The position numbers and the translations under genes are program-made. A model generated the notes under the pieces. That model made no database searches. It was not told the DNA's origin and worked only from the letters and a program-made list of their open reading frames with translations. A DNA stretch of 63,867 nt, counting the filler, from Octopus bimaculoides (taxonomy: Eukaryota), in the NCBI RefSeq assembly GCF_001194135.2. It is 7 parts of 7 records of this genome, joined end to end, with 100 filler letters (N's around TTAATTAATTAA, not from the genome) between each part and the next. Parts side by side here need not be neighbours in the genome. Positions count along the whole stretch, not along the records: positions 60,449 to 62,699 come from NW_026342308.1; 6 more parts are not named here. The stretch is one strand, 5' to 3'. The number at the start of each line of letters is the position of its first letter. Within the stretch, counting starts at the first letter, position 1. Shown here piece by piece: positions 61,988 to 62,289 of the stretch.

Positions 61988-62289
61988 CAGTGCAGTCTCT
62001 CCATCCATGGTATTACTGCCCTCCTGCTGCATCATGGTATAATCCAATGACTCACCTTTGTTGCGGCGACCAAATCAAAATTAAAGGAGATGAAGGAAAT
62101 ACTGCTTGTTGTGGAACAACCCCTATTAAATTCCCGCTGGAAAGATGTTGTGGAACACAAGTATATGAGGCTGGTACTACTCAGCATTGTTGTGGAACAG
62201 AACTATACGATACTACTACTGGTCAGCGTTGTTGTTATGATTTTCATTGGGGTTATGGTATCCATTATTTCGTATGTAATATCAACTGA
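61988..62289 (+). CDS. Terminal coding exon of a galaxin-like di-cysteine repeat, probably secreted peptide
   Basis: Acceptor ttttcgtcatttacAG (phase 1) precedes (A)VQSLHPWYYCPPAASWYNPMTHLCCGDQIKIKGDEGNTACCGTTPIKFPLERCCGTQVYEAGTTQHCCGTELYDTTTGQRCCYDFHWGYGIHYFVCNIN*. It has five CC dyads and 12 Cys in non-repetitive DNA. The 5' exon was not located. Confidence 0.75.

What the first reader, a model, noticed from the sequence alone, without database searches (positions are those of the whole stretch)
61988..62289. Galaxin-like di-cysteine repeat peptide: the only clear host gene in the window
Seen: C-x13-CC-x14-CC-x11-CC-x12-CC-x12-CC-x13-C with CCG and Y-[ND/E] motifs, a good acceptor, a stop and downstream AATAAA. 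A phase-1 start at A-V-Q-S fits a signal peptide split across exons. Knowledge: galaxins are coral skeletal-matrix proteins, and a squid galaxin (EsGal1, Euprymna) is implicated in bacterial symbiont selection and antimicrobial action. Inference: a very short (~95 aa mature) secreted galaxin-like peptide, possibly an unannotated antimicrobial, matrix or venom-gland product.
Basis: partly seen in the sequence, partly recalled or inferred. Interest (0 to 1): 0.7.

Follow-up and report, generated by a model that had tools for sequence, protein, structure and literature searches.

The report
Octopus mini-galaxin gene, last coding exon
This stretch is the second and last coding exon of a small octopus gene for a secreted, disulfide-rich "galaxin-like" mini-protein; the family is known, and the unusual point is that the exon has diverged faster than its own intron and 3' flank.

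Summary
Window 61988-62289 (+) follows a conserved splice acceptor in phase 1. It encodes (A)VQS + 96 residues with exactly C-x13-CC-x14-CC-x11-CC-x12-CC-x12-CC-x13-C, then TGA. It matches Pfam Galaxin_repeat above the curated cut-off (42.5 bits against 28, E 7.5e-11).

The whole piece is collinear with the Octopus sinensis gene for XP_036361356.1 ("galaxin-like", 96 aa). That gene has two exons. Exon 1 encodes MMQRTLTIFALLLFVT plus one base, then comes a ~9 kb phase-1 intron, and exon 2 starts at the same CAG|CAGTGCAGTCT junction. Exon 1 of the window's gene should lie about 6 kb upstream of the piece and cannot be seen.

A tandem paralogue, rich in Trp, His and Arg (O. vulgaris CAI9727409.1), has the same architecture. 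The window copy carries one extra 14-residue CC unit from a 42-bp tandem duplication.

The exon is only 70-80% identical to O. sinensis, against 92-98% for the intron and 84-96% for the 3' flank. AlphaFold2 predicts a stack of beta-hairpins (pLDDT 83.7) with no counterpart in the PDB.

Function is untested. The window peptide is mildly acidic, unlike the cationic squid galaxins. Verdict: a new member of a known kind.

The parts
60449..61987 (+). 3' part of intron 1. It contains a decayed ORF at 60930-61144 that may be a retrotransposon relic, a 425-N assembly gap at 61224-61648 and a (CATA)n/(GTAT)n microsatellite at 61649-61771.
   Evidence: Window 60449-61198 aligns to O. sinensis L001 15909-16672, and the region from 61682 onward aligns to L001 from 18711. 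Both L001 stretches lie inside the annotated 8.97-kb intron (10050-19021) of XP_036361356.1. The microsatellite was found by TRF.
61955..61987 (+). Splice-acceptor region: a CTGAT branch-point-like motif (61955-61959), a T-rich tract, and CAG ending at 61987.
   Evidence: Read directly from the sequence. The last 200 nt of the intron are 93% identical to O. sinensis, and the junction CATTTACAG|CAGTGCAGTCT is identical. The branch point is inferred from the consensus only.
61988..62289 (+). Exon 2 coding part (phase 1). It encodes the last 4 residues of the signal peptide (AVQS, first base supplied by exon 1), a 96-aa mature galaxin-repeat peptide with 12 Cys, and the TGA stop.
62146..62235 (+). 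42-bp tandem duplication (2.1 copies, 79% matches) encoding CCGTQVYEAGTTQH and CCGTELYDTTTGQR. This is one 14-residue CC unit more than in O. sinensis.
   Evidence: TRF; the 14-codon gap in the alignment with P0003.
62290..62699 (+). 3' UTR and downstream flank, with AATAAA at 62399-62404 (conserved in the O. sinensis orthologue) and at 62564-62569 (conserved in the orthologue and in the paralogue of two species).
   Evidence: Four-way alignment; 90.3% identity to O. sinensis. The actual cleavage site is not known.

Best explanation
Window 61988-62289 is the second and last coding exon of a two-exon octopod gene for a small secreted galaxin-repeat protein. It is the orthologue, or a very recent paralogue, of Octopus sinensis XP_036361356.1.

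Shown: a 5' exon outside this piece (about 6 kb upstream of it, by collinearity) encodes a hydrophobic leader of the type M-x-QRTL-x-IFA-x-LLFVT plus one base. Splicing in phase 1 joins it to ..CA GTG CAG TCT (AVQS).

Inferred: signal peptidase cuts after AVQS (V at -3, S at -1). This releases a 96-residue peptide in which five CC pairs and two terminal single Cys lock a stack of short beta-hairpins, one hairpin per 13-16-residue unit. The stack ends in a conserved aromatic and His-rich tail (CCY-x-x-HW-x-x-x-IHY-[FY]-[VL]-C).

Shown: the gene belongs to a tandem family whose members differ in repeat number (2, 4 or 5 CC units), in charge (-3 to +4) and in sequence. Their leader exon, intron ends and 3' UTR stay similar. 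The mature-peptide exon has diverged two to three times more than its non-coding flanks.

Most likely function (inferred, about 0.4): an extracellular effector at an epithelial or mucosal surface that binds microbes or a polysaccharide or matrix surface, as proposed for squid galaxins. It would be diversifying under selection.
For: Family: PF24748 at 42.5 bits against a cut-off of 28; 137 HMMER hits.

Orthologue and gene structure: P0003 is XP_036361356.1, 'galaxin-like [Octopus sinensis]'. Its gene spans 9.26 kb for 96 aa. Exon 1 is at L001 10001-10049 followed by GTAAGA, and exon 2 starts at 19022 with the same junction as the window. The piece is collinear with L001 over intron, exon and 3' flank.

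Paralogue: CAI9727409.1 (O. vulgaris, 72 aa) has a homologous exon 1 (MVQRTLIIFAILLFVT), the same AVQS junction and a similar 3' UTR. It sits about 9.4 kb upstream of the P0003 gene in O. sinensis.

Leader: the hydrophobic core scores KD 3.06 and 3.65 in the exon-1 leaders, against 1.63 for the in-frame read-through of the intron.

Fold: AlphaFold2 gives pLDDT 83.7, with 12 short strands, each CC at the end of a strand, and low confidence in the last ~16 residues.

Divergence: exon 70-80% identical, against 92-98% for the intron and 84-96% for the 3' flank, with the step exactly at the acceptor. dN is 0.289 and dS 0.462, against a non-coding distance of 0.07-0.12. Non-synonymous sites against non-coding sites give Fisher p = 8e-7.

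Function by analogy: squid galaxins are expressed in epithelia lining the symbiotic organs, and synthetic repeat peptides from them inhibit bacteria (PMC12773714).
Against: Exon 1, the promoter and any transcript evidence are missing. No transcript-derived contig encodes P0003 or P0155 in the collection; only genome records do. Expression therefore rests on other groups' gene models.

dN/dS is 0.63 (bootstrap 0.35-1.16), not above 1, and dS is itself raised. Repeat-unit turnover or gene conversion from another family member could therefore explain the excess exon divergence without positive selection.

The window peptide is acidic (pI 5.9, charge -2.9), unlike the cationic squid galaxins, whose reported charges run from +5 to +21.5.

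Disulfide connectivity is not known. No solved structure resembles the model.
Confidence: 0.85

Rival explanations
1. The product is a structural or matrix component rather than a defence effector. It would be a cross-linked extracellular framework protein in a hardened or chitinous octopus tissue (beak, radula, sucker lining, stylet, egg capsule), like coral galaxin or the mussel shell protein cysrichin.
For: Coral galaxins and galaxin-like proteins are skeletal-matrix proteins (PMC2726143). Cysrichin is a 163-aa mollusc galaxin-like protein with a 26-aa signal peptide and five di-Cys repeats, expressed in mantle (PMC10045328). The window peptide is mildly acidic (pI 5.9), as Amgalaxin is (pI 4.5). 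It has 14 aromatic residues and a His- and aromatic-rich tail that could take part in cross-linking (the cross-linking idea is inference).
Against: Octopods lack a mineralised shell. The gene and protein differ from coral galaxin: there is no dibasic pro-peptide site and only 96 residues. Charge flips between orthologue and paralogue (-2.9, +3.0, +4.1), which is odd for a conserved framework role. There are no tissue data either way.
Confidence: 0.25
2. The product is a component of salivary-gland (venom) secretion.
For: It is small, secreted and disulfide-rich. It belongs to a tandem family with a conserved leader and a fast-evolving mature exon. From general knowledge, that pattern is classic for venom peptide families.
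Against: No homology to any known venom family was found; all homologues are galaxin-repeat proteins. A literature search for galaxin plus octopus returned nothing about salivary glands. There are no tissue data.
Confidence: 0.08
3. The window copy is a non-functional or unexpressed duplicate (pseudogene), and its high exon divergence reflects relaxed constraint.
For: No annotated protein or transcript-derived ORF containing this exon was found. Exon 1 is unseen. The exon is much more diverged than in a typical orthologue pair.
Against: The frame is open for 100 codons. All 12 Cys, the CC-G motifs, the acceptor and the AATAAA signals are intact, and indels are all multiples of three. Relaxed constraint alone cannot push exon divergence (dN 0.29) above the flanking non-coding divergence (0.07-0.12).
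Confidence: 0.08
4. It is a single-exon gene starting at ATG 61885 (the 134-aa ORF P0001), or an internal exon of a long multi-repeat galaxin.
For: The frame is open from ATG 61885 in the window and also in O. sinensis. Most family members are long, 200-1400 aa.
Against: The read-through leader has no hydrophobic core (KD 1.63, against 3.06-3.65 for the exon-1 leaders). In the paralogue the same frame is closed by a stop 14 codons upstream, with no ATG. Two independent annotations use the two-exon model with homologous leader exons. A stop codon follows the last Cys within 0-3 codons in all three genes, the 3' UTR is conserved, and the GTATGT at the V-C codons is absent in O. sinensis.
Confidence: 0.03

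Closest known systems
Octopus sinensis 'galaxin-like' XP_036361356.1 (UniRef A0A7E6F0J0), a computational NCBI gene model
   Same: Collinear locus covering intron, exon and 3' flank. Identical splice junction and phase, AVQS end of the signal peptide, HPWYYC start, ACCGTTPI core and aromatic C-terminal tail. About 61% amino-acid identity.
   Different: The window copy has one extra 14-residue CC unit, three small indels and a 3-residue C-terminal extension (NIN). It has 12 Cys rather than 10 and a net charge of -2.9 rather than +3.0. The exon is far more diverged than the flanks.
Octopus vulgaris CAI9727409.1 and its unannotated O. sinensis copy (L001 392-562): the tandem paralogue
   Same: Two-exon architecture, homologous leader exon, AVQS junction, terminal ..YLVC or ..HLVC, and a similar 3' UTR with a conserved AATAAA.
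   Different: Only two CC units and 7 Cys, very rich in Trp, His and Arg, charge +4.1. It falls below the Pfam galaxin cut-off at 16 bits.
Squid galaxins EsGal1-10 (Euprymna scolopes)
   Same: Cephalopod proteins with tandem dicysteine repeats, for which AlphaFold predicts beta-rich repeat domains. They are proposed to act as antimicrobial effectors at epithelia (PMC12773714).
   Different: They are described as strongly cationic (+5 to +21.5), and the activity was measured on single synthetic repeat peptides. The window product is a 96-residue acidic mini-protein. No tissue or activity data exist for it. Orthology to any EsGal was not tested.
Coral galaxin (Galaxea, Acropora) and mussel cysrichin
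   Same: Signal peptide followed by tandem di-Cys repeats; extracellular. Cysrichin is also short (163 aa, five repeats).
   Different: Coral galaxins are about 300 aa, with ~30-aa units containing two CC pairs and a dibasic pro-peptide site, and they are occluded in the skeleton. None of that is seen or testable here.

Membership tests
Galaxin-repeat proteins (Pfam PF24748, 'galaxin-like') | Match to the family profile above the curated gathering score | tested here: met
   42.5 bits against a cut-off of 28, E 7.5e-11, residues 16-85. The orthologue P0003 scores 37.4 bits.
Galaxin-repeat proteins (Pfam PF24748, 'galaxin-like') | Tandem units bounded by di-cysteine (CC) motifs at a regular spacing of 11-14 residues | tested here: met
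   Spacings are 13, 14, 11, 12, 12, 13, with five CC pairs. TRF detects a 42-bp period.
Galaxin-repeat proteins (Pfam PF24748, 'galaxin-like') | N-terminal signal peptide (secreted protein) | tested here: inconclusive
   Exon 1 is not in the piece. The orthologue and paralogue have a hydrophobic leader ending ..FVTAVQS on a separate exon joined at the same junction. No signal-peptide predictor was available.
Coral galaxin sensu stricto (skeletal organic-matrix protein) | About 30-residue units with two CC pairs, a dibasic pro-peptide cleavage site, and presence in the mineral matrix | tested here: not met
   There is no KR, RR, KK or RK after the leader, units are 13-16 residues, and the product is 96 aa. 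Matrix occlusion cannot be tested here.
Squid EsGal-type antimicrobial galaxins | Net positive charge (reported +5 to +21.5) | tested here: not met
   The window's mature peptide has charge -2.9 and pI 5.9. The orthologue is +3.0 and the paralogue +4.1.
Squid EsGal-type antimicrobial galaxins | Expression in epithelia facing microbes, and growth inhibition by the peptide | not testable with these tools
   No expression data or assay can be reached from here.

The most novel reading that the evidence does not exclude
Octopods carry a previously undescribed tandem family of 'mini-galaxins'. These are two-exon genes with a conserved leader exon, intron ends and UTR. Their single mature-peptide exon diversifies faster than the neighbouring non-coding DNA, by substitutions, by gain and loss of repeat units and by charge reversal. 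This is the 'accelerated exon' signature known from venom and host-defence peptide families. The family would act as a variable repertoire of secreted microbe-binding or antimicrobial peptides, including a Trp/Arg/His-rich cationic member.
Probability: 0.3. Interest if true: 0.55.

Novelty: new member of a known kind. Interest (0 to 1): 0.35.

Why it matters
Galaxin-repeat proteins are widespread in marine invertebrates. Their function is known only loosely (coral skeleton matrix, squid symbiont control), and I found no solved structure for the family. A roughly 96-residue, single-domain member with a confident beta-hairpin-stack model would be a convenient minimal unit for determining the fold, the disulfide map and the binding activity of the whole family. 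The sharp excess of exon over intron divergence, together with a cationic Trp-rich tandem paralogue, gives a testable hint that octopuses diversify these peptides as extracellular effectors. By itself, though, this is an ordinary host gene whose orthologue is already annotated as 'galaxin-like'.

Tried and rejected
1. The word-indexed protein search with the 100-aa peptide, and again with P0003, returned only the query itself each time. It missed P0003 even though the two share words, so 'no hit' there is weak evidence.

2. Sequence search against PDB chains gave only chance-level hits (best E 0.02, coronavirus spike RBD fragments, Cys-driven). I rejected them.

3. Foldseek of the model against the PDB gave nothing below E = 1.

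4. The exact-product look-up of the window's 134-aa ORF found nothing on record.

5. A search for a leader exon inside the piece found none, as expected from collinearity.

6. I looked for the O. vulgaris orthologue of P0003. The fetched locus L002 ends before it, so this is undetermined.

7. An Rfam scan of the piece gave no hits.

8. Pfam on the intronic decayed ORF gave no hit.

9. The Heath-Heckman 2014 EsGal1 paper and the PNAS 2025 supplements are not held, so I could not compare EsGal lengths or sequences.

10. The source species could not be identified, because no eukaryotic genome collection is searchable here. Non-coding identity to O. sinensis is 89-93%, whereas O. sinensis and O. 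vulgaris are 98-99% identical. The source is therefore another octopod, or the window holds a recent paralogous copy.

Full report
**Observation.** The piece (window 60449-62699) was read directly. The reading frame that starts at 61987 gives AVQSLHPWYYCPPAASWYNPMTHLCCGDQIKIKGDEGNTACCGTTPIKFPLERCCGTQVYEAGTTQHCCGTELYDTTTGQRCCYDFHWGYGIHYFVCNIN followed by TGA at 62287-62289. An AG at 61986-61987 sits behind a T-rich tract, with a CTGAT branch-point-like motif 29 nt upstream. The exon would therefore start at 61988 with two bases of an Ala codon, i.e. phase 1. AATAAA occurs at 62399 and 62564. Tandem Repeats Finder detects a 42-bp period at 62146-62235, equal to one 14-residue CC unit.

**More than chance, and family membership.** The peptide matches Pfam PF24748 (Galaxin_repeat) at E 7.5e-11 and 42.5 bits, against a curated cut-off of 28. 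An exhaustive HMMER scan of 1.84 billion representative proteins gave 137 hits at E<=1e-3. Most are long proteins with 5-14 matched stretches. Named relatives include 'galaxin-like' proteins of Mercenaria and Carassius. Sequence hits to PDB chains were at chance level.

**Gene structure.**
- The best hit, P0003 (96 aa, 61% identity), is XP_036361356.1 'galaxin-like [Octopus sinensis]'.
- Its gene spans 9.26 kb on chromosome record CM016866.1 (locus L001).
- Exon 1 (L001 10001-10049) reads ATG ATG CAA ... GTA ACA G followed by GTAAGA. It encodes MMQRTLTIFALLLFVT plus one base.
- Exon 2 starts at L001 19022 behind CATTTACAG with CAGTGCAGTCT, identical to the window junction.
- The piece is collinear with this locus. 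Window 60449-61198 matches L001 15909-16672 (inside the intron) and 61682-62695 matches L001 18711-19679.
- The window's own exon 1 should lie about 6 kb upstream of the piece, and none was found inside it.

**Rival gene models.**
- The frame is open upstream to ATG 61885 (the 134-aa ORF), and it is also open in O. sinensis. That read-through leader has no hydrophobic core: the maximum mean Kyte-Doolittle value over 10 residues is 1.63, against 3.06 and 3.65 for the exon-1 leaders.
- In the paralogue the same frame is closed by a stop 14 codons upstream.
- An internal-exon reading is excluded for three reasons. All three genes stop within 0-3 codons of the last Cys. The 3' flank is conserved (90.3% to the orthologue, and recognisably to the paralogue), including the AATAAA at 62564. 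The donor-like GTATGT in the window is CTTATGT in O. sinensis.

**A small tandem family.**
- About 9.4 kb upstream of the P0003 gene, O. sinensis has a second exon behind the same kind of acceptor (L001 392-562). It encodes (A)VQSCYWNYCGGHWYNPYTQRCCGTTIIPWWRAHCCRGWLHGWPWWNRHWHWYLVC*.
- Its O. vulgaris counterpart is annotated as CAI9727409.1 (72 aa, 'Hypothetical predicted protein'). It has a homologous leader exon (MVQRTLIIFAILLFVT) and an ~8 kb intron.
- O. sinensis and O. vulgaris are 92-99% identical across this region (98-99% in the cleanest blocks). The window is only 89-93% identical to O. sinensis in non-coding DNA. The window therefore comes from another octopod, or it holds a recent duplicate.
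- Members differ in the number of CC units (5, 4, 2), in Cys count (12, 10, 7) and in net charge (-2.9, +3.0, +4.1).

**Exon more diverged than its flanks.**
- In 50-nt windows, identity to O. sinensis is 92-98% in the last 200 nt of the intron. It drops to 70-80% from the first exon base, apart from one bin made up mostly of alignment gaps. It returns to 84-96% in the 3' flank.
- Nei-Gojobori estimates over 79 aligned codons give dN 0.289 and dS 0.462, so dN/dS is 0.63 (bootstrap 0.35-1.16). With the Cys codons excluded the ratio is 0.82.
- The Jukes-Cantor distances of the three non-coding segments are 0.074, 0.104 and 0.124.
- Non-synonymous sites have changed more than the non-coding sites (Fisher p = 8e-7), and so have synonymous sites (p = 7e-6).
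- From general knowledge, this is the pattern reported for venom and defence peptide families. But because dS is also raised, repeat-unit turnover or gene conversion from another family member is an equally valid explanation. I do not claim positive selection as shown.

**Structure.** AlphaFold2 was run on a 34-sequence alignment and gave mean pLDDT 83.7 and pTM 0.62. The model has twelve short strands. Each CC lies at the end of a strand and is followed by a turn and a return strand, which makes a stack of beta-hairpins. The aromatic tail (residues 81-96) has low confidence. Foldseek found no PDB match below E = 1. Disulfide connectivity could not be read out.

**Function.**
- Shown: it is a member of the galaxin-repeat family, it is a terminal exon, and its orthologue and paralogue have secretory-type leaders.
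- Inferred: it is a secreted, disulfide-laddered mini-protein.
- Squid galaxins are expressed in epithelia lining the symbiotic organs, and single synthetic repeat peptides from them inhibit bacteria (PMC12773714). Coral galaxins and mussel cysrichin are matrix proteins (PMC2726143; PMC10045328).
- I rate a surface or defence effector role at about 0.4, a structural or matrix role at about 0.25, a salivary or venom role at about 0.08, and a non-functional copy at about 0.08.
- The acidic charge of the window peptide argues against a simple cationic-AMP mechanism. The paralogue's Trp/Arg/His-rich composition resembles Trp-rich antimicrobial peptides, but that resemblance is from memory and is not a test.

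**Novelty.** The family, and the O. sinensis orthologue's annotation as 'galaxin-like', already exist. Among the ten held papers that mention both galaxin and octopus, none has these short two-exon octopus members as its subject, judging from titles and abstracts. No protein containing the window's exon is in the 5.8-billion-cluster collection apart from the window's own ORF. I file it as a new member of a known kind, with a modestly interesting evolutionary signature.

Noticed in passing
window 60930-61144 (+): A decayed ORF lies inside intron 1: ...NYGQLLRNLLLLYPDYKYTFMPIIIRAMRFLSKRIIVNQDKLGFSEKEIKELICTFTNTICK*. It is also present, with changes, at the collinear place in O. sinensis (L001 ~16400-16600). 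From memory it resembles the C-terminal tail of a non-LTR retrotransposon ORF2. Pfam gave no hit, so this is unverified.
   Followed up: partly
window 61224-61771: A 425-N assembly gap is followed by a (CATA)n/(GTAT)n microsatellite. The collinear O. sinensis interval (L001 16672-18711, plus ~14940-15880) is about 2 kb or more of the same tetranucleotide arrays. The gap most likely hides an unresolved microsatellite.
   Followed up: partly
L001 392-562 (O. sinensis) and L002 18098-18268 (O. vulgaris): A tandem paralogue encodes a 52-residue mature peptide with 7 Cys (an odd number), 9 Trp, 5 His and 4 Arg, and charge +4.1. It is not among the called genes listed for the O. sinensis locus, but it is annotated as a hypothetical protein in O. 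vulgaris. It falls below the Pfam galaxin cut-off (16 bits), so annotation pipelines would not name it.
   Followed up: partly
window 61988-62289 against flanks 61788-61987 and 62290-62695: There is a sharp step in identity to O. sinensis exactly at the splice acceptor: intron 92-98%, exon 70-80%, 3' flank 84-96%. Both dN and dS exceed the non-coding divergence.
   Followed up: yes
proteins P0079 and P0141: Short Galaxin_repeat proteins with signal-like leaders occur on contigs labelled bacterial (for example a Thermoanaerobaculia MAG with a 140-kb contig) and in many environmental assemblies. Either the repeat exists in bacteria or these bins contain eukaryotic contamination.
   Followed up: no
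L002 ~21670-26970 against L001 ~4000: O. vulgaris carries about 5.3 kb of extra sequence, relative to O. sinensis, in the spacer between the two mini-galaxin genes. I did not characterise it.
   Followed up: no
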